Program-made: the position numbers and the translations under genes | The notes under the pieces: model-generated | What the model was told of the DNA's origin: nothing | Database searches by the model: none | Seen by the model: only the letters and a program-made list of their open reading frames with translations | Assembly: GCA_965112735.1 (NCBI GenBank) | Contig: OZ218954.1 | Coordinates: 3,906,001 to 3,970,000 of the forward strand | Length of the DNA stretch: 64,000 nucleotides | From: Phaeosaccion multiseriatum | Taxonomy: Eukaryota; Protista; Ochrophyta, other classes | Reading direction: 5' to 3' | Part shown: positions 1 through 9,160 of the stretch, piece by piece | Numbering within the stretch: the first letter of the stretch is position 1 | Layout: every line of letters begins with the position of its first letter

Positions 1-1656
1 GGCGCCGAGAAAGACGCCGCAGTAGCAGCGGCGGGCGGTGATTCAACAGCAGCAGCGGCCGATGGCAACGCTCAGAGCACCACCGAAGAGAAGGGCAAGG
101 CCCCGGGAGGGAAGGACACCGCAGCAGCTGCAGCAGTTGGTGATACAGCAGCAGCAGCGGCAGCAGCGGCGGGTGCCGACGAGTCTGTATCACCAACTGC
201 CGCGGATCCCCCCCTGCCCCACGGCCAGCGCTTGTTGCTCTGCTCTGGTGAGCTGTACGTGGTGCAGCGCCTCTTTGGGCTGCTTGTGGAGCGCCTCGGT
301 CGCGCTGCTTACCTGTGCGACGAACTTGCGATGGACGAGGCGAGGAGGGTCAGCGAGTCCAAGGGAGACGCAGGAGGAGACGCAAGCGCCGCGGCAAAGA
401 AAGCGGCAAAAGCAGCGGCAGTTGGTGATACAGCGGCCGCGGCCGGTGGCGAGGCGGCGACTGCTACTGCTGGAGGAGCTCTGAACGGACACGCGGAGGC
501 TGCGGAGAAGGGCGGCAAAGGAGGCGCCCCTGAGGGAGGCAGTGCCGCTGCTGAAGGGAAGGAGGAAGACGCGGCAGGTGCGGCAGTTGGTGCTACCGAC
601 AAGGCCGAGCTTCCCTACGAGTGCTTCCTGGCGCTGCTGTATGGCTGGATCAGCGGCTCGGTGTCCACAGAGAGGTACGAGGAGGGCTCGCGGCAGCTCA
701 TGGGTAACCAGGGCTACGTGTGCTTCACCATGGACGCCGTTGTCGCCAACCTGTTGAAGAACGCGCATGTGGCGGCGGAGAGTGAGGTTTCGGGGGCCCT
801 TGTGCAGCTGTATCGGTACCACGCTGCGCAGAATCGGGACGGAATGCGCCCCAAGCAGTACCTCAAGGAATGCAAGGAGCTTCTCAAGGGCAGGGAGGGG
901 GAGGGGCTGGAGATGTTCCGAGTGCAAATTTACCCGGGGGGGGATCCCGGGGGGGCAGTCAAGGAGGAGGCGAAGGAGGGGAAAGCGAAGGAAGCGAAGA
1001 TGCTCGTGGAGGTGTTGGGCGATCTGTGGAAGGAGGAGAAGGAGGAGAAGGAGGCAGAGGCAAAGGAGAAGGAGGAGGAGGCCAAGGAGGAGGAGGAGGG
1101 CGAGGAGGAGGGCGAAAAGGCGAAGAAGGTCAAGGAGGAGGAAGAGGGACATGGAGCCGGCGAGGGGGAGGAGGAGGGCGAGGAGCACAAGGCCAACAAG
1201 GCGGCGGAGGAGGAAGAGAGTAGTAGCAAGCAGCGCGACAGTGCGGAGGCGGAGGGGACGGCAGCAGACGGCGATGCTATGGACACCGCTGGGGATGGGC
1301 CAGCGGGCGAGGGTGCTGAGGAGGGGGGCGACGTAGACACCGCAGAGGCGGCAGAGGCCACCTCAGAAGGTGCAGCAGCAGCAGCAGCAGGGGGCGGGGG
1401 AGGGAGCAAGAGTCGGAAGCGGCCCATGAGCGCAAGCGGAGGAGACTCTGACGGGCGGGCAGGGGCAGGCGGGGCAGCAGCAGATGAGGCCGCGGGGGAG
1501 AAGGAGGGAGGCGCCTCGGGCTCGGGGACAGCAGGGACGGGTGCTGAGGAGGAGGCGGGGGGGGCAGCAGCGGGCACGGCAGGGGGTGATGCAGAGGATG
1601 CCGGAGAGGGCGAGGGGGAAGAGGGCGGAGAGCCGGCCAAGAAGAAGAGACGGTGA
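1..1656 (+). CDS. SIN3: 3' terminal exon of a Sin3-like paired amphipathic helix transcriptional corepressor (Sin3 C-terminal domain plus acidic tail); 5' end outside the window
   Basis: Frame 1 is open from base 1 to TGA at 1654-1656. Motifs LYVVQRLFGLLVERL and YECFLALLYGWISGSVSTERYEEGSRQLMGNQGYVCFTMDAVV match the Sin3 C-terminal domain pattern. Ends in an NLS-like PAKKKRR. Confidence 0.8.
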   Translation, partial: GAEKDAAVAAAGGDSTAAAADGNAQSTTEEKGKAPGGKDTAAAAAVGDTAAAAAAAAGADESVSPTAADPPLPHGQRLLLCSGELYVVQRLFGLLVERLGRAAYLCDELAMDEARRVSESKGDAGGDASAAAKKAAKAAAVGDTAAAAGGEAATATAGGALNGHAEAAEKGGKGGAPEGGSAAAEGKEEDAAGAAVGATDKAELPYECFLALLYGWISGSVSTERYEEGSRQLMGNQGYVCFTMDAVVANLLKNAHVAAESEVSGALVQLYRYHAAQNRDGMRPKQYLKECKELLKGREGEGLEMFRVQIYPGGDPGGAVKEEAKEGKAKEAKMLVEVLGDLWKEEKEEKEAEAKEKEEEAKEEEEGEEEGEKAKKVKEEEEGHGAGEGEEEGEEHKANKAAEEEESSSKQRDSAEAEGTAADGDAMDTAGDGPAGEGAEEGGDVDTAEAAEATSEGAAAAAAGGGGGSKSRKRPMSASGGDSDGRAGAGGAAADEAAGEKEGGASGSGTAGTGAEEEAGGAAAGTAGGDAEDAGEGEGEEGGEPAKKKRR

Positions 1657-2394
1657 TGGGATGTTGCATTGGCATGCATGCATGCATGCATGCCACAGTT
1701 TGCAATACATGCAGCTGTTGGTGATATACCTGCAGCAATACAATACTGCACACCGCGTATAGTTCTATTGGGGGTTGCGGTATCATGGGCAGGCGTGTAG
1801 GCCGGATGGGATGGGATACATGCAGACCGCGTTCCATAGACCCACAGAATGCAGTTCTATAGACCCACAGAATGCAGCGAGCAGCAGAGGCGGTGCGTTC
1901 CACCTCTCAGTAACACAAACAGTGCGATGAGCGCACAGACAGACAGACAGAGGTAGGAAGTACTTGCACACAGTGCACAGGTCTCACGTGGAGCGAAGGG
2001 CATGTGCTGCTGACGCGCAAGGGAGCGCGTTGGGGGACGGAGGGGAGGGGGGAGGGGTCCGCGCTGGGGTAACTCGCACGGACGGGATACGGTAGCAGCT
2101 AGATGGAATAAAAGGTTCAATTGATTGTCTTAACTCGCCATCACGGCCTGACCTGAGTAGCACCCACTGCAATCAAGAGGAAGGTCCTTTGCAGGTGTCA
2201 CTTTTTACATCCCGGGAGCATGAACCACTCCCCACAGGACCTGCGGGGGGGATCTGATAAGCTGCGACACTTCCCCACGCCCCGCCCGTCTCAATGAGTT
2301 CTCTTCTCTCTTTGCTGCTCGGCCGGGGATGCTGGAAGCCGTGTTTACCCGCCTTGCAACACCCTCGTCAAGTGAAACTCCACTCAGCTTCCAA

Positions 2395-2716: not shown

Positions 2717-5700
2717 TCAAGATTCAGGGACCGTTTCGGAAGATTCAGGGGCCGCTGACGTAGGGCTGCACAACATACTGCAGAAGGCGGCGCGGATGCT
2801 GTCGATCGTGTCTGACCTCTTGACGGAGTCTATCGAAGCATCAAGAGCTGCGGGTAGCAAAATCAAGCACTCGTTTGAGTATAGATTGAAGCTGCAGAGC
2901 AAACGATACTCAACAGCGAACACCCACGGCATCCATGCGCGCCATCCTGTCGGCTTCTTCTCCTGTATCACATGCACCTGACGCAACAAACATCGAACAT
3001 GAGTGGAAGAGCGGTTTCATGTACGATTGTAGGGACGATACTGATCGAAGCCCAAGCACGAAAACACTTGCAGGATGCCCCGGGTGCGGCTACGGCTACC
3101 CAGCTAAGCTCATGTCTTCGAACATTCGCTACTTGCTTCTTGTGCCATTCAGAGCATTCGAGGCAAGAATACATGTGCTGGGAGGCTGGGTACTTCGGCT
3201 GAAAACGCCCCATAAGTGTCACAGTCAGGGTCAGGGCGGGGTCGCGATAGGTTGGGTTGGGTTGCTTAGGTCAGGGTCACGGTTGGGTCAGGGCACGGTT
3301 AGGGTCAGGGTCACGGTTAGGGTCAGGATATGAGATGACAAGATCTTACCATGTTTGACGTATCTTTGTCGGGATGTAAACTGGTCGTACCGCCTTTATT
3401 CGGCTCGCTTGATTTTAAGACGCAACAACCAGCTTTGGACAGTGAATCCCACGTTCTTGCATACTTCCAATTCCCGTGGACCGCCAGCCCTACCCCTTTA
3501 AGCTTGGCCGACCCGTCCACCCCAGATGAATTCGTCTGAGTGGTCTGCACTGTTGGCCGCTCCGAAAAGAACGCCGCATCTTCCTACTCAGCAACATTTG
3601 CAGTCGGAGTGTTAGCAAAGATTCAAAGACTCAGGGGAATTGATGGCAACTATACTACTGGCTGACTTACCCCCGATACGTTGCCCAGCCAAATTTGATC
3701 CTTGTACTCCGTCACCGTGTGCCCCAATATGTTGGTGGCTTTGCTGCCGAACCAGACCTTACTCTTTCCTTTAAAGAAATATTGTTCTTTGTCAATCGCC
3801 TCAGCGACTGCAACTGCGCAAAAATGGGGTACGCCCACCACAGCCAGCATCATCCATGTAGGCTCGTCCTCCTCGGCTTCCAATTGAGCAAAGCTTACGT
3901 CGATGGTACAGCTGTCATCACATGGTGTCCAAGACTGTGTCTCCTCTCCCTCCGACATGAAGGCCGCAAACCGCTTTCCTCTTCCAAACATATCGCCCTC
4001 GTCCTCCTCTATTTCCTTCTTCAGTTCATCATTGGTAACCATCAGAGGAAAACAAAGCTTTGCGGTAGGCTCAAAGACGATCCCAGAAGGGCCGCTCACT
4101 GCGGTTGAAACCAGCCACTGCATATCGGGGTGCTCCTCGTCGAATGCCAAACCCAGCTTGAAGTCTGCCGAGAAGCTACGCTCGTCAATTATGTCGGTCG
4201 TGGAGCCCTCCTCCGTGTTAATCCGAAGGAAGTCGCATGCATTCGAAGTGTACGTGTACGGCCCGTTCCCTTCCCCCGAGCGTGTGAAGGATGACATGAT
4301 GGTCTTGGCTTCATTCATGGGTTCTTCTGTGCCTGAGAAGCAACAAGGGATTCAAAAATTGCCACAGGGTGAGGAGCTGTCATGTGCCTCATTGGCACAC
4401 ATCTGAGCAAGAAGGGATTTGGTGAGGCGCTTTTGGACCCTCATAAAGGAATGCATAAATCTAGACATCGGGTCCATGACCCACCACAGCCAAGTGCCAA
4501 GGCTGTCGCCTATGAGGCTGCACTGAGGCTGAGGACTAAAGTTGCTGCACCCCCACCACCCCGCCCTCCCATCATGCTCCCCACCCTCACCTTCAGCAAC
4601 GTCGGTCACGGTCTCCTCAATAGCCCTGGGGCTATAAACATACAAGGCAAGGAGAGTGACGAGAATGATTTTCAGAACTCGGGCCGTTATCACCAGCCAT
4701 GCCTCCTCCGTCGCTACTCAAGCTCACCTCTCTGGCTCCGATTCGGAGATGAACGTCTTCGCCGTGTTAGTACTGTCCGGGTCACGGTGTATGTCCCACA
4801 TGTCCGCCTCCCACTCACCAGTGAACTTGTTTCTACTAAAGACATCTATGGACAACTTTGTCCCTTTTCCGACCTGTGGCGGAACGCCCCCTGTAGATGG
4901 GAAGGAAGTCCTTAGGGCACACTAACATCAAGCCCAAGGAACGTGAGCGCGGACCACTTACCGGTGAACTGGTTGTCGGAGAGGTGCAGTAAATGAAGGT
5001 TCCGCAGACCTCCAAGCTCGGCTGGAATGGTCCCTGCGGATGGGAGGAAAGTTCTTTGGTCACACAAACATGAAGTCAAAGGGACGCGAACGGGTACGCG
5101 TACCACTTACCAGTGAGAATGTTGTTGTGGAGGAGCAAATGCCGAAGCTTCTCCAGACTTTCAAGCTCCCTTGGAATGCTCCCTGCGGTGAGGGAAGTTC
5201 TTTGTCATACGACTATCAAGCGAAAGTTACGCGAACGGGTGTGCGTACCACTTACCAGTGAGCTTGTTGTCGGATAGGTTCAAAACCTCAAGCTTCTCCA
5301 GACTGCCAAGCTCCGATGGAATGCTCCCTGCGGAGCCGAGGGAAATTCTTTGGTCACACAAAATATCAGGTGGAAGGGACGCGAACGGGTGTGCGTACCA
5401 CCTACCTACAAGGTCCTGACGCGAAAAATCGAGCTTGGTCAGATGGGTCTGGGTGTTGATGTCTTCAGGGAGACTGAGGCTGTTACCACGGAACCTGTAA
5501 TCCGTGATGTTGATCCCCAATCGCCCGATGAGGGCAGCGGGAATAGGACCTGTGTATCGGAGGGAACATGTTGGGTTATACACAAATCTAGAGTGAAAGG
5601 GACGCGAACGGGTACGCGTACCACTTACCAGTGAGAATGTTGTTGTGGAGGAGCAAACGCTTAAGCTTCAGACTTCCAAGCTCGGGTGGAATGCTCCCTG

Positions 5701-7676
5701 CGGGGCGGAGGGAAGTTCTTTGTCATACGACTATCAAGCGAAAGCGAGGCGAACGGGTGTGCGTACCACTTACCGCTGAGCTTGTTGTCGGAGAGGCTCA
5801 AAGCCTTAAGCTTCTCCAGACTTCCAAGCTCTGGTGGAATGCTCCCTGCGGGGCGGAGGGAAGTTCTTTGTCATGCAACTATCAAGCGAAAATACGCACG
5901 CGGGTACGCGTACTACCTACATTCTAGATTGTTGTGGTCGAGCCGTAGTACTTTAAGGTTTGCAAGCTGTCTTAGTTGCGGCGGAATACTCCCTGAGGTG
6001 TGGGGAAAGTTCTTCAGCCATACGAATATCAAGTCAAGAGGACGTGACCGGGTGTGCGTACCACTCACCAGTGAGCATATTGTTGTTCAAAAACAGTCTC
6101 TTAAGGTTCTGAAGACCTGCAAGCTCGGGTGGAATGCTCCCTGCGGATGGGAGGAAAGTTCTTTAGTTCATGCTCATATCAAGTTAAAGGGACGCGAACG
6201 GGTTCGCGTACTACCTACCTTCTAGATTGTTCTCGTCGAGCAGTAGTTCTTGAAGGTTTGAAAGCTTTGCAAGTTGCGGCGGAATACTCCCTGAGATGGG
6301 GGGAAAGTTCTTCAGCCATACGAATATCAAGTCAAGAGGACGTGAACGGGTATACGTACCACCTACCTACAAGGTCCTGACGGGACAAAGCGAGCTTGGT
6401 CAGATGGGTCTGGGTGTTGATGTCTTCAGGGAGAGTGAGGCTGTTATCACAGAAATAGTAACGCGTGATTGTGATCCCCAATCGCCCGATGAGGGCAGCG
6501 GGAATAGGACCTGTGTATCGGAGGGAGGTTCTTCGGTCATACACAAGATCTAGAGTGAAAGGGACGCGAACGGGGTTCGCGTACCACTTACCAGTGAGCT
6601 TGTTGTCGGATAGGTTTAAAACCTCCAGCTTCTCCAAACTTCCAAGCTCCCTTGGAATAATCCCTGCGGAGCGGAGGGAAGTTCTTTGTCACACGACTAG
6701 CAAGCGAGACGGACGCGAACAGGTACGCGTACCACTTACCAGTGAGCTTGTTTAAGGCGAGGCTCAAAACCTCAAGCTTCTCCAAACTTCCAAGCTCCCT
6801 TGGAATGCTCCCTGCGGAGTGGAGGAGAGTTCTTTGGTCATACTCATATCAAGCGAAAGGGACGCGAACGGGAACGCATACCACCTACCTTCTAGATTGT
6901 CTGAGGCGAGCCATAGTTTTTGAAGGTTTGACAGCTGTCCAAGTTGCGGTGGAATGCTCCCTGAGATGGGGAAAGTTCTTCAGCCATACTAATATCAAGT
7001 CAAGGGGACGCGAACGGGTGTGCGTACCACCCACCTTCTAGATTGTTCCATGCGAGCTGCAGATCTTGAAGGTTTGAAAGCTCTCCAAGTTGCGGCGGAA
7101 TGCTCCCTGAGATGTGGGGAAAGTTCTTCAGCCATACTCATATCAAGTCAAGAGGACGCGACCAGGTACGCGTACCACTTACCAGTGAGCTTGTTTAAGG
7201 CGAGGCTCAAAACCTCAAGCTTCTCCAAACTTCCAAGCTCCCTTGGAATGCTCCCTGCGGATCGGAGGGAAGTTCTTTGTCACACGACTATCAAGCCAAA
7301 GGGACGGCAACTCCGCTTCTTTCTGGGCCACTTCCCCATCGATGAGGTTGTTCCTTTCATCTCTAAGTCCATGATTCGCCACGCCACAGTACCTATCTGA
7401 AGGCACAGGGTTCGTGCAACACGCGCGCTACGCGCAAGGGTGGGGGACCAATCTTCACCCCAGCCCCAACCTCCACGGGACCTTCTTACCTTCGAGTCCG
7501 TTCCGAGGCAGCTCGAGACGCACCACATACCCTTTCTCGTCTACGGTCACTCCATGCCACTGGTCCAAAGGTTGTTCGGTGTTCCATCCCCCGCTTTCAT
7601 TCCACCCGTCTCCGTTTGTGGCCAAGAAGAAGACCCTAAGTACTGCACGCTGCTGCGTCTCTACTTCCTCCATCAC
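2717..7676 (-). CDS. Multi-exon LRR protein: N-cap exon, 16 LRR cassette exons, ZU5-like domain with HFC motif, unknown C-terminal domain
   Basis: Exon 7676-7490 (RAVLRVFFLATNGDGWNESGGWNTEQPLDQWHGVTVDEKGYVVRLELPRNGLEG) is a typical stramenopile LRR N-cap. AG/GT-bounded phase-1 LRR exons: 7254-7183, 7106-7035, 6960-6889, 6811-6740, 6663-6592, 6510-6367 (144 bp), 6290-6219, 6140-6069, 5992-5921, 5845-5774, 5697-5629 (69 bp), 5549-5406 (144 bp), 5327-5256, 5182-5111, 5033-4962, 4890-~4728. Consensus GSIPxELGxLxxLxxLxLxxNxLTG. Frame continues through ~4630-4590, 4332-3671, ~3583-3350, ~3198-3130 and 2978-2717; the 3' exons are less certain. Confidence 0.8.
3224..3327 (+). repeat. Degenerate telomere-like hexamer array (GGTCAG/GGTTAG/GGTCAC) inside an intron
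   Basis: gtcagggtcagggc...ggttagggtcagggtcacggttagggtcagg; a similar array sits at 19630-19672. Confidence 0.7.
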
Positions 7677-8918
7677 TCTTGCTGGTATGTATATGCGCGT
7701 CTTTGATCCTCAATAATTTATTCCGTCGTCGGATTCTAGGTGATGTCGTCTGTCGTCGGGTGTCTTCGATCTTCGATTTAAGGAGTGCAGCGCAGATGCT
7801 TCGTTATGGGCCTTCCCTGTGAGAGGCGGGGGGAGAAAGGGTAAGGCACCGGCTTTAACGATGGAGACGGAAGGAGAAGGGATACACCAGGGGCAGGTGC
7901 ATGGCATGGGGGGGGGGGGGAAAGGGATTGTACTGCTTGTACCCGCAGCATTTATTTAGAGACTTGTCAGCGAGTTCTCTCTTTGTCTGACGTCTTCCCT
8001 CCTTCCCCTTCCCCCCCGCCCTCAGATAAGCAGACGCTCTCTGCATGCCAGACGTCATGAGGGACTTCACGGACAATCAAGGTGACCACGGACACGCCCT
8101 TGACTAATGCACGTGCTTGTGATGGGTGGCAGGGCGCGCTGCCAGCGGCACAGCTCAGGCTCTTCGCATTCCTGCAGCTCTGATCGAGTGCGAGTGGTGG
8201 TTTTAAGGAGCGGCTCAGTTGCGGAGAGGACGGGAAGGAGGCTCTCTCTGATGGCATCGACCATCACCATCTCTTGCACGTATTCATCTTCCCCCACACC
8301 TCCTCTTACGCCTCTCCCTCCCTTCCTCCCCTCCCCTCTCCTCCCCTCCCCTCTCCCCCCCTCCCCTCCCCTCCTCCCCTCCCTCCCCTCCCGTCCCCTC
8401 ATCTCTCTCCCCTCTCCTCCCTCCCTCCCCTCCCCTCCCCTCCCTTCTCTTCCTTCCTCTTCACACCGATGAGAACAGTTCGACATCCGACAGAACGCCC
8501 CGGGGTGCAAGCAGCACCAGCTGTCCCTCCAAGAGAAAGTCTAGCTACTCCTGGGCACTGTGTCGTCAACCAAACCAACCCCCACCTCCACTACGTGGGT
8601 GGAGAGTGACCCTTCCTCCGCTGCTGTGACCAGCGCAAGCCCCTTGCTTCTAAGCATGTACATTGTCGCTCTCTTCTGTCCACGCGAGTACCGCCGTGAG
8701 GGCTTGCACATCACAGACATGCCCCCCCCCCGAGTTGGTGCGGCAGTGAGAGAGATACTCTGCAGCTCCAAACAACAGCCAAGGTGCGCTAAGTGGCGGT
8801 GGGGGTAGGAGTGGGGGTGGTGGTGGAGGAGGTGGAGATACGCTTACCACTCAAAGGTGAGGTCGTGGTCTGAGAGGTCTAGAGTCCCAAGGTTCTACAG
8901 CGCTCCCAGCGAGGCAGG

Positions 8919-9160
8919 GTGGAATGTTCCCTGGAATGTTCCCTGCCTGGAATGTTCCCTGCGGATGGGGGGGGGAGTTCTTTGGTCACCCGGATACCAA
9001 TTCAAAGGGACGCGAACGGGTTCGCGTAACCACTTACCTTTTAGATTGTTCTCGTCGAGCAGCAGTTCTTGAAGGTTTGAAAGCTGTCCAAGTTGCGGCG
9101 GAGTACTCAGGGGGGAACTCTTTAGCCATACAAATACCGAGCCAAGGGGACGCGAACGGG
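8919..9160 (-). pseudogene. Orphan LRR exon/intron units upstream of the LRR gene start
   Basis: 9108-9038 encodes STPPQLGQLSNLQELLLDENNLKG with an intact GTAAG donor but a damaged acceptor. It is flanked by the gggacgcgaacggg intron motif. 8919-8962 holds a triplicated exon start (ggaatgttccct x3). Confidence 0.8.

What the first reader, a model, noticed from the sequence alone, without database searches (positions are those of the whole stretch)
4819..7254. One-LRR-per-exon cassette array with evidence of shuffling and within-exon recombination
Seen: 13 exons of 72 bp (the last one reads through its donor), one of 69 bp and two of 144 bp, all phase 1-1, on a ~148-bp period. Any subset therefore stays in frame. 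Exons 7183 and 6740 are identical. The 144-bp exon occurs twice, differing mainly at exposed positions (TITRYYFCDN vs NITDYRFRGN). Exon 5111 is a mosaic (PREL..SLEKL front, LLLHNNILT back as in 5629); exon 6592 joins a 7183-type front to a 5256-type back. Variation concentrates in the xxLxLxx face (QDLQLAW, QKLWLAS, QELLLDE, KVLRLDH). Inference: a diversity generator working by unequal crossover, gene conversion or combinatorial splicing.
Basis: partly seen in the sequence, partly recalled or inferred. Interest (0 to 1): 0.75.

Follow-up and report, generated by a model that had tools for sequence, protein, structure and literature searches.

The report
One-repeat-per-exon LRR cassette gene
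This is a real algal gene whose leucine-rich-repeat binding domain is built from 16 interchangeable exons, a design published for brown-algal candidate immune receptors in 2012; the sequence shows past recombination and selection for variety, but nothing shows the cell reshuffles it actively.

Summary
The anatomy is confirmed. On the minus strand, 4819-7254 holds 16 exons (13 of 72 nt, one of 69, two of 144). All have AG/GT borders, phase-1 introns of 71-81 nt and no stop in the spliced frame. Exons 7254-7183 and 6811-6740 are identical.

This is the "type I LRR exon" design of brown-algal ROCO and other LRR genes (Zambounis 2012; Teng 2024).

What I could show:
- One 99-nt perfect tract covering a single cassette, with ~78% identical upstream flank.
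- A recombination signal among the array's cassettes (p about 0.001).
- Nonsynonymous excess at the concave-face codons (dN/dS 6.1 here; 1.9 over nine loci), against 0.24-0.55 elsewhere in the repeat.
- A cassette pool shared with ROCO genes on other contigs.
- An intron core about three times less diverged than fourfold sites.

This gene is not a ROCO. The array most likely splices to a membrane helix and a single-copy C-terminal domain with no detectable relatives; ZU5 is only a weak lead.

No data bear on combinatorial splicing, and nothing supports somatic rearrangement. Other agents of this scan reported the same cassette system on other DNA of this genome. Verdict: a new member of a known kind.

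The parts
7490..7673 (-). First coding exon: ATG at 7673, N-terminal LRR cap (Trp/Gly-rich cap motif, then the first LxLxxNxLxG), ending in phase 1 before a GTAAG donor
   Evidence: At least 37 paralogous cap exons head LRR arrays elsewhere in the genome. No Pfam hit.
7255..7489 (-). First intron (235 nt). It holds the decayed 3' end of a cassette (about 7350-7320; the donor reads GG instead of GT) followed by a normal cassette-intron 3' part.
   Evidence: Read directly.
7183..7254 (-). LRR exon 1, 72 nt, T-type (ends NKLT); identical to exon 4
7035..7106 (-). LRR exon 2, 72 nt, E-type (ends NNLE)
6889..6960 (-). LRR exon 3, 72 nt, E-type
6740..6811 (-). LRR exon 4, 72 nt, T-type; identical to exon 1
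6592..6663 (-). LRR exon 5, 72 nt, T-type; candidate mosaic (front like exon 1, back like exon 13)
6367..6510 (-). LRR exon 6, 144 nt, a double irregular LRR (D-type cassette)
   Evidence: Another 13 copies elsewhere in the genome, on other contigs and on C5, at 69-90% identity, besides its 91% twin in this array.
6219..6290 (-). LRR exon 7, 72 nt, E-type
6069..6140 (-). LRR exon 8, 72 nt, T-type
   Evidence: Single-exon Pfam LRR_4 E = 0.002, below the cut-off.
5921..5992 (-). LRR exon 9, 72 nt, E-type. Its last base is T, so the junction codon reads Trp instead of Gly.
5774..5845 (-). LRR exon 10, 72 nt, T-type
5629..5697 (-). LRR exon 11, 69 nt (one codon deleted at repeat position 11)
5406..5549 (-). 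LRR exon 12, 144 nt, the second D-type cassette; 91% identical to exon 6
5256..5327 (-). LRR exon 13, 72 nt, T-type
5111..5182 (-). LRR exon 14, 72 nt, T-type; closest to exon 11 (7 differences)
4962..5033 (-). LRR exon 15, 72 nt, divergent T-type
4819..4890 (-). LRR exon 16, 72 nt, the most divergent (C-terminal capping repeat); GTGAGT donor at 4818
7163..7261 (-). 99-nt perfect identity tract shared with 6720-6818. It covers 7 nt of acceptor, the whole exon and 20 nt of the downstream intron. The upstream flank is only ~78% identical.
   Evidence: The next best copy in the genome is 90% identical.
5082..5104 (-). One example of the conserved 23-nt intron core. It is found in 12 of the 15 array introns and in the stray cassette, always on the minus strand.
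   Evidence: 13 matches against 0 expected. Genome-wide 198 matches against 0 for the control pattern.
4717..4818 (-). Inferred last array intron (about 102-105 nt) with a TACTAAC branch site at 4772-4766 and AG acceptors at 4718-4717 or 4715-4714
   Evidence: inferred, no transcript
4591..4716 (-). Inferred exon for a hydrophobic helix (21-residue window, mean Kyte-Doolittle about 2.1 by my hand calculation); phase 1-1
3671..4332 (-). Inferred exon inside a 233-codon open frame (4351-3653): the C-terminal domain. It is single copy in the genome, has no detectable relatives and carries a His-Phe-Cys motif near 3830-3819.
   Evidence: ZU5 is a weak lead only.
9004..9145 (-). Stray inactivated E-type cassette 1.3 kb upstream of the ATG. 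Its exon is 68 nt (a 4-nt loss at the 5' end breaks the frame) and an intact cassette intron follows.
8920..8989 (-). Truncated start of a T-type cassette after the stray one, decayed into a short tandem duplication of its first 12-16 nt

Best explanation
The stretch is the ligand-binding domain of one gene of the 'type I LRR exon' kind known from brown algae. It has an N-terminal cap exon and then 16 symmetric phase-1 exons that each encode one plant-type 24-residue LRR (two of them encode two). Short introns with a nearly uniform centre separate the exons. The array diversifies in the germline over evolutionary time by two steps. First, ordinary homologous recombination (unequal crossover and short-tract gene conversion) uses the shared intron core as homology. 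This moves, copies or deletes whole cassettes within the array and between at least 15 cassette loci, and because all introns are phase 1 every product stays in frame. Second, selection favours amino-acid change at the four or five concave-face positions of the beta-strand. Shown here: the anatomy, a recent single-cassette conversion or duplication, mosaicism, the shared pool, the nonsynonymous excess, and the uniform intron core with class-specific ends. Inferred: that recombination happens in the intron core; that the array is spliced to a membrane helix and an orphan C-terminal domain (so this is a non-ROCO member); and that the protein is a receptor.
For: Anatomy. Literature match (72-nt exon, same register GxxPxxLxxxxxLxxLxLxxNxLx, same selected positions). 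Recent event: a 99-nt perfect tract limited to one cassette, unique in the genome. Mosaicism: PHI-type test with same-codon pairs excluded, p = 0.0003 for the unit and 0.0013 for the exon only, among the 8 distinct T-type cassettes of this array. Shared pool: mean exon difference is 24.7 within arrays against 25.1 between them. About half of this array's cassettes have their nearest relative on another contig, and several map to the same foreign cassette, so there is no collinearity. Cassette units are 81-91% identical to foreign units (12 of 13; the divergent last exon matches only partially), while the cap exon reaches 74% at best. Selection: exposed codons give dN/dS 6.1 in the window (Fisher p = 0.018) and 1.9 over 51 independent pairs from nine loci (p = 0.0013). 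Other codons give 0.24 and 0.55. Introns: in 91 aligned introns, core columns 5-50 have mean pairwise difference 0.152, against 0.419 at fourfold sites and 0.348 over whole exons. Column 4 follows the upstream exon class, columns 51-77 follow the downstream class, and the core follows neither. The core occurs 198 times in the genome against 0 for the control. Gene model: an open frame of 755-833 codons through consensus splice sites.
Against: No transcript confirms any splice site or the join to the C-terminal open frame. The PHI signal vanishes in the genome-wide sets, probably through saturation, so it rests on 8 sequences. dN/dS between paralogous cassettes that recombine is only approximate, and the window-only estimate rests on 5 pairs. 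The uniform intron core could be kept by selection on splicing of very short introns rather than by recombination. An ungapped comparison gives a higher core difference (0.247), still below the fourfold sites. I could not identify the organism, so 'brown-alga-type' rests on resemblance to the papers, not on phylogeny.
Confidence: 0.8

Rival explanations
1. Combinatorial splicing. The array is a menu, and the cell makes many receptor isoforms from one gene by skipping different subsets of the in-frame cassettes. This could act on top of germline shuffling.
For: Every exon is a multiple of 3 with phase-1 borders, so any subset stays in frame. Splice sites and introns are nearly uniform. Multiple LRR-skipping variants are reported for two Ectocarpus ROCO genes (PMC11378527).
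Against: No transcript data for this organism were available. Symmetric phase is also what exon duplication alone produces. No conserved RNA structure exists in the introns (alifold finds none; mean z +0.65). No antisense docking copy of the intron core exists in the window, so a regulated Dscam-like choice has no visible apparatus.
Confidence: 0.3
2. Programmed somatic recombination. The cassettes are rearranged in somatic cells, with the conserved intron core as the recombination signal, as Zambounis et al. proposed for brown algae by analogy with lamprey VLRs.
For: A 23-nt core is present in 198 cassette introns and nowhere else seen. Breakpoints fall between the class-specific intron ends. 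Spare inactivated cassettes lie beside the gene. Inverted cassette copies exist at another locus (C10).
Against: The germline gene is complete and spliceable, unlike a VLR germline gene. The perfect 12-nt palindrome occurs in only 12 of 91 introns. A shared core is what ordinary homologous recombination both uses and maintains. One assembly gives no information on somatic variation. No recombinase or deaminase was linked to the locus, though I did not search for one.
Confidence: 0.05
3. Decaying or unexpressed repeat. The array is a relic of tandem duplication with no present function, and the variation is neutral decay.
For: The C-terminal domain has no relatives. Decayed cassettes lie in the first intron and upstream. 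There is no expression evidence.
Against: All 16 exons keep the frame and all 32 splice dinucleotides. Scaffold codons show dN/dS of 0.24. The introns carry in-frame stops while the exons do not (read from the sequence). The whole model is open for 755-833 codons.
Confidence: 0.08

Closest known systems
Type I LRR exon genes of Ectocarpus and other brown algae, including non-ROCO LRR loci (Zambounis et al. 2012, PMC3341825; Teng et al. 2024, PMC11378527)
   Same: One LRR per 72-nt exon in the same register (GxxPxxLxxxxxLxxLxLxxNxLx). The phase is symmetric. Inactivated spare cassettes occur. Cassettes are shared between loci. Positive selection falls on the same four concave-face positions (their 14, 16, 18, 19 are my 15, 17, 19, 20). 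The genome also holds many LRR-Roc genes with the same cassettes.
   Different: This gene has no Roc domain. The array appears to continue into a membrane helix and a single-copy orphan domain. The genome is 67 Mb in 22 contigs. No antisense cassettes occur at this locus. A 144-nt double-LRR cassette class is part of the pool. Term searches of the two papers for 'intron', 'palindrom', 'gene conversion' and 'unequal' turned up no passage about the uniform intron core.
Lamprey and hagfish variable lymphocyte receptors (VLR)
   Same: LRR modules serve as interchangeable cassettes, diversity lies on the concave face, and spare cassettes lie near the gene.
   Different: VLR germline genes are incomplete and are assembled somatically by a gene-conversion-like process. 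Here the germline gene is complete, each cassette is a spliceable exon, and no somatic change is shown.
Plant LRR resistance genes and receptor-like proteins (plant-specific 24-residue LRR class)
   Same: The same 24-residue LRR consensus with GxIPxxLG. Diversifying selection acts on the xxLxLxx residues. Unequal crossover and gene conversion occur among repeats and paralogues.
   Different: I recall plant LRR domains as mostly encoded in one or a few large exons, not one repeat per exon with uniform introns (not checked here). No signal peptide is evident at this gene's N-terminus.
PIDD1 / UNC5-type LRR-ZU5 proteins
   Same: An LRR domain is followed by a beta-rich domain with a His-Phe-Cys motif that recalls the His-Phe-Ser autoproteolysis site. 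The protein-language-model neighbours are ZU5 clusters (scores 0.81-0.83).
   Different: No Pfam ZU5 match in the open frame or in the six-frame genome search. No PDB or HMMER relative was found. The fold prediction failed with pLDDT 31. Membership is not established.

Membership tests
Type I LRR exon cassette genes (brown-algal kind, Zambounis 2012) | Each LRR is encoded by one 72-nt exon in the register GxxPxxLxxxxxLxxLxLxxNxLx | tested here: met
   13 of 16 exons fit exactly. One has a codon deletion and two are double-length. Definition quoted.
Type I LRR exon cassette genes (brown-algal kind, Zambounis 2012) | Exon length is a multiple of three and the intron phase is the same on both sides, so exons can be added, lost or skipped in frame | tested here: met
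   All 16 exons are phase 1-1, and the joined 1293 nt have no stop. Teng 2024 calls the same offset 'phase 2'.
Type I LRR exon cassette genes (brown-algal kind, Zambounis 2012) | Inactivated or opposite-strand cassettes in or beside the LRR domain | tested here: inconclusive
   There are two inactivated cassettes on the coding strand (first intron; 9004-9145). No opposite-strand copy exists in the window. Opposite-strand copies exist at C10 of the genome.
Type I LRR exon cassette genes (brown-algal kind, Zambounis 2012) | Excess amino-acid change at the concave-face positions | tested here: met
   dN/dS is 6.1 in the window and 1.9 over nine loci at positions 14, 15, 17, 19 and 20, against 0.24 and 0.55 elsewhere.
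Type I LRR exon cassette genes (brown-algal kind, Zambounis 2012) | Cassettes exchanged within and between loci | tested here: met
   99-nt conversion tract. PHI p about 0.001. Within- and between-array distances are equal, and identical exons occur on different contigs.
ROCO GTPases (LRR-ROC-COR) | A Roc GTPase domain downstream of the LRRs | tested here: not met
   PF08477 hits lie just downstream of at least 17 other cassette arrays in the genome, but none falls in C5:3906001-3970000. The open frames downstream of the array have no Pfam hit.
ROCO GTPases (LRR-ROC-COR) | A COR domain after Roc | not tested
   Not searched, since Roc is absent.
ZU5 domain proteins (PIDD1/UNC5/ankyrin type) | Match to the ZU5 profile (PF00791) | tested here: not met
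   No hit at E up to 1 in the open frame or up to 10 in the six-frame genome search. That genome search rang in no control genome either, so it is weak evidence.
ZU5 domain proteins (PIDD1/UNC5/ankyrin type) | ZU5 beta-sandwich fold | tested here: inconclusive
   The single-sequence AlphaFold2 model has pLDDT 31. No homologues exist to build an alignment. The ESM Atlas neighbours are ZU5 clusters at 0.81-0.83, below the 0.9 level.
VLR-type somatically assembled LRR receptors | An incomplete germline gene completed by somatic insertion of flanking cassettes | tested here: not met
   The germline gene is complete and open through all 16 exons.
VLR-type somatically assembled LRR receptors | Somatic sequence variation between cells | not testable with these tools
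   Only one assembly is available.
Dscam-like regulated exon choice | A docking site complementary to a selector sequence in each variable-exon intron | tested here: not met
   All 13 copies of the intron core in the window lie on the gene's own strand and none is antisense. No conserved intron structure was found.
Plant-specific 24-residue LRR class | Consensus LxxLxLxxNxLxGxIPxxLGxL with a 24-residue period | tested here: met
   Column profile. Single exons give sub-threshold LRR_8, LRR_4 and LRR_1 hits (E 0.002-0.02). The joined domain was not searched.

The most novel reading that the evidence does not exclude
The near-invariant intron core is found 198 times in the genome and only between LRR cassettes. 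It might be a dedicated cis-signal, not merely shared homology. A cell-encoded machinery might use it to exchange cassettes among the ~15-35 loci, or to choose exons during splicing, within the life of an individual. That would make this an LRR-based anticipatory receptor system outside vertebrates.
Probability: 0.06. Interest if true: 0.9.

Novelty: new member of a known kind. Interest (0 to 1): 0.35.

Why it matters
One-repeat-per-exon LRR arrays are the main candidate pathogen-receptor repertoire of brown algae. They are also the basis of a still untested proposal that an alga might diversify receptors somatically. This locus adds a clean, complete example on a non-ROCO gene, drawing on the same cassette pool as the ROCO genes. 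It gives three measurable handles for the open question: a dated single-cassette conversion tract, class-specific intron ends that place the exchange zone in a uniform 45-nt core, and a strong contrast between hypervariable exposed codons and a frozen intron. With a compact 67-Mb, 22-contig genome, the somatic-versus-germline question could be tested with modest long-read sequencing.

Tried and rejected
(1) ROCO identity: rejected, because no Roc hit falls in the window while other arrays have one.

(2) C-terminal domain identity: left open.
- Pfam gave nothing.
- The word-index protein search gave nothing.
- The full HMMER search gave one hit. It is a 3237-residue protein made of 25 Rx_N repeats, and its E-value is the sum of 23 weak stretches of about 31 bits each. 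I treat it as spurious.
- The PDB sequence search gave nothing.
- The ZU5 profile gave nothing.
- AlphaFold2 without an alignment failed, so I ran no fold search on that model.

(3) Palindrome as the key feature of the introns: rejected. The perfect 12-nt palindrome occurs in 12 of 91 introns, and the commonest form is not a palindrome.

(4) RNA hairpin or docking-selector pairing: no support.

(5) Antisense cassettes at this locus: none found.

(6) Relatives in metagenomes through the intron core: no match.

(7) Genome-wide PHI tests: not significant, probably because the hypervariable sites are saturated.

(8) Organism identity: not obtainable with these tools. The Phaeoexplorer preprint gave no usable clue.

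Exons were searched one by one by reference. Joining was done only inside scripts, to count stops and lengths.


Full report
**Observation.**
The region lies in a eukaryotic, intron-rich genome: G000 has 67 Mb in 22 contigs, and the window is C5:3906001-3970000. The gene is on the minus strand.

- Each exon begins with two bases that complete a Gly codon started by the last base of the exon before, so all introns are phase 1.
- Introns are 71-81 nt, which gives the ~148-nt period also reported by Tandem Repeats Finder.
- The 16 exons joined are 1293 nt with no stop.
- Exons 7254-7183 and 6811-6740 are identical.
- The two 144-nt exons differ in 9 codons, 8 of them amino-acid changes.
- Positional entropy peaks at repeat positions 14, 15, 17, 19 and 20, the x positions of xxLxLxx.
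- Single exons give only sub-threshold Pfam LRR hits, as expected for one repeat.

Joining was done only inside scripts to count stops.

**What it is.**
[quoted passage not shown] Teng et al. 2024 found the same in four brown algae. Their positively selected sites 14, 16, 18 and 19 are counted from exon base 3, which makes them my 15, 17, 19 and 20. They also reported LRR-skipping splice variants (PMC11378527). Zambounis et al. had already proposed exon shuffling and possible somatic recombination.

The genome holds the same system at large scale:
- at least 142 DNA matches to a five-cassette probe;
- at least 37 cap exons;
- Roc GTPase domains directly downstream of at least 17 arrays.

**This gene is not a ROCO.**
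No Roc hit falls in the window. After exon 16 there is a GTGAGT donor (4818), a TACTAAC branch site and an AG acceptor at about 4715. These give an in-frame join to an exon for a hydrophobic helix (4716-4591). A second phase-1 join leads to an exon within a 233-codon open frame (4332-3671). The whole model from the ATG at 7673 is open for 755-833 codons. Reading through the exon-16 donor instead ends the protein at residue 523.

The C-terminal frame is single copy and has no Pfam, word-index, PDB or credible HMMER relative. The only lead is ZU5-like, from language-model neighbours at 0.81-0.83 and a His-Phe-Cys motif. The model without an alignment was unusable at pLDDT 31. I put the fused LRR-helix-orphan-domain model at about 65%, against a separate downstream gene.

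**Evidence for recombination.**
- *Single-cassette tract.* The exon 1/exon 4 identity extends over exactly 99 nt: 7 nt of acceptor, the exon and 20 nt of intron. It reaches 108 nt with one mismatch. The upstream flank is ~78% identical, and the downstream intron halves belong to different classes. The next best copy in the genome is 90% identical. This is a recent single-cassette gene conversion or insertion, not a multi-unit tandem duplication.
- *Mosaicism.* I used a PHI-type test that excludes same-codon site pairs and permutes codon blocks. Among the 8 distinct T-type cassettes of this array it gives p = 0.0003 for the unit and 0.0013 for the exon only. Genome-wide sets are not significant, probably because the hypervariable sites are saturated.
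The mosaic of exon 5182-5111 rests on one codon.
- *Shared pool.* Cassettes do not cluster by locus. The mean difference is 24.7 within arrays and 25.1 between them. Identical exons occur on different contigs. Several of this array's units map to one and the same foreign unit. The units are 81-91% identical to units of ROCO loci, except the divergent last exon, which matches only partially. The cap exon reaches at most 74%.

**Evidence for selection.**
I applied Nei-Gojobori counts to independent nearest-neighbour pairs.

| Codon set | Window array | Nine loci, 51 pairs |
|---|---|---|
| Exposed positions (14, 15, 17, 19, 20) | dN 0.78, dS 0.13, ratio 6.1, Fisher p = 0.018 | ratio 1.9, p = 0.0013 |
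| Other 18 codons | ratio 0.24 | ratio 0.55 |

They are approximate, because the cassettes compared are paralogous and recombine.

**The introns.**
I aligned 91 inter-cassette introns from nine loci on eight contigs. They are strikingly uniform.
- Columns 5-50 have a mean pairwise difference of 0.152. Fourfold-degenerate exon sites show 0.419 and whole exons 0.348.
- An ungapped estimate is 0.247, which is still lower than the fourfold sites.
- Column 4 tracks the class of the upstream exon and columns 51-77 track the class of the downstream exon. The core tracks neither.
- Exon distance correlates with the upstream 27 nt (rho 0.40) but hardly with the downstream core (rho 0.10).

The mobile unit is therefore the 3' intron end, the exon and the first few intron bases. 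The exchange zone is the shared core.

The core occurs 198 times in the genome against 0 for the control pattern. In the window it occurs 13 times, all on the gene's strand. The other four introns of my gene model lack it. It is not a conserved RNA structure, and the perfect palindrome occurs in only 12 of 91 introns.

The simplest reading is that ordinary homologous recombination both uses and homogenises this core, while selection keeps the exons different. Purifying selection for splicing of very short introns cannot be excluded.

**Spare cassettes.**
- The first intron holds the decayed 3' end of a cassette whose donor reads GG instead of GT.
- An E-type cassette with a frame-breaking 4-nt loss lies 1.3 kb upstream of the ATG, followed by an intact cassette intron and a truncated T-type start (9145-8948).
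- No antisense cassette lies at this locus. The C10 locus has alternating orientations.

**What could not be tested.**
No transcript, strain or read-level data were available, so combinatorial splicing and somatic rearrangement remain open. A metagenome scan for the core found nothing. I could not identify the organism. "Brown-alga-type" rests on the match to the papers, not on phylogeny.

**Earlier work of this scan.**
Other agents reported the same cassette system, the uniform introns, the mostly imperfect palindrome and a roughly sixfold excess at exposed residues, all on other DNA of this genome. My measurements on this locus agree with them independently.

**Verdict.**
It is a new member of a known kind, on a non-ROCO gene. 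Interest 0.35.

Noticed in passing
window 3819-3830 (minus), within the open frame 4351-3653: A His-Phe-Cys motif sits in a predicted beta-rich part of the orphan C-terminal domain. It recalls the His-Phe-Ser autoproteolysis site of PIDD1/UNC5-type ZU5 domains. Language-model neighbours are ZU5 clusters, but no profile or fold support was obtained.
   Followed up: partly
window 8920-9145 (minus): A stray frame-broken E-type cassette with an intact cassette intron, followed by a T-type exon start that has decayed into three tandem copies of its first 12-16 nt. It lies 1.3 kb upstream of the gene's ATG.
   Followed up: yes
window 7320-7350 (minus), in the first intron: The remnant of a cassette 3' end (reads ...NNLIDG) whose donor GT has become GG. 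Its intron core has diverged, while the 3' intron part is intact and serves exon 1.
   Followed up: partly
window 5921 (minus): Exon 9 ends in T instead of G, so the split junction codon reads Trp instead of the Gly found at all other junctions.
   Followed up: no
G000:C10:562000-568400 (locus L006): Cassette copies alternate between the two strands every ~600-750 nt. All carry the perfect-palindrome form of the intron core. This array differs in kind from the one in the window.
   Followed up: no
window 3269-3327: A hexamer and 17-mer microsatellite (GGTCAG-like on the plus strand) in what would be an intron downstream of exon 3583-3349.
   Followed up: no
window 1-2000 and 8311-8449: Very GC-rich low-complexity stretches (GC 0.64, GC skew +0.29 in 1-2000; a CCTCC-type array at 8311-8449) with long Pro/Ser/Ala-rich open frames on the minus strand. 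Coding status is unknown.
   Followed up: no
protein P0001: The only HMMER hit of the C-terminal domain is a 3237-residue protein made of 25 Rx_N repeats. Its E-value of 9e-38 is the sum of 23 weak repeated stretches and should not be read as homology.
   Followed up: yes
G000, several contigs: At least 17 Roc GTPase hits lie directly downstream of cassette arrays (C3, C6, C15, C16, C5:671750), so the genome has a large LRR-Roc family in clusters. C3:5479000-5574000 holds at least seven arrays.
   Followed up: partly
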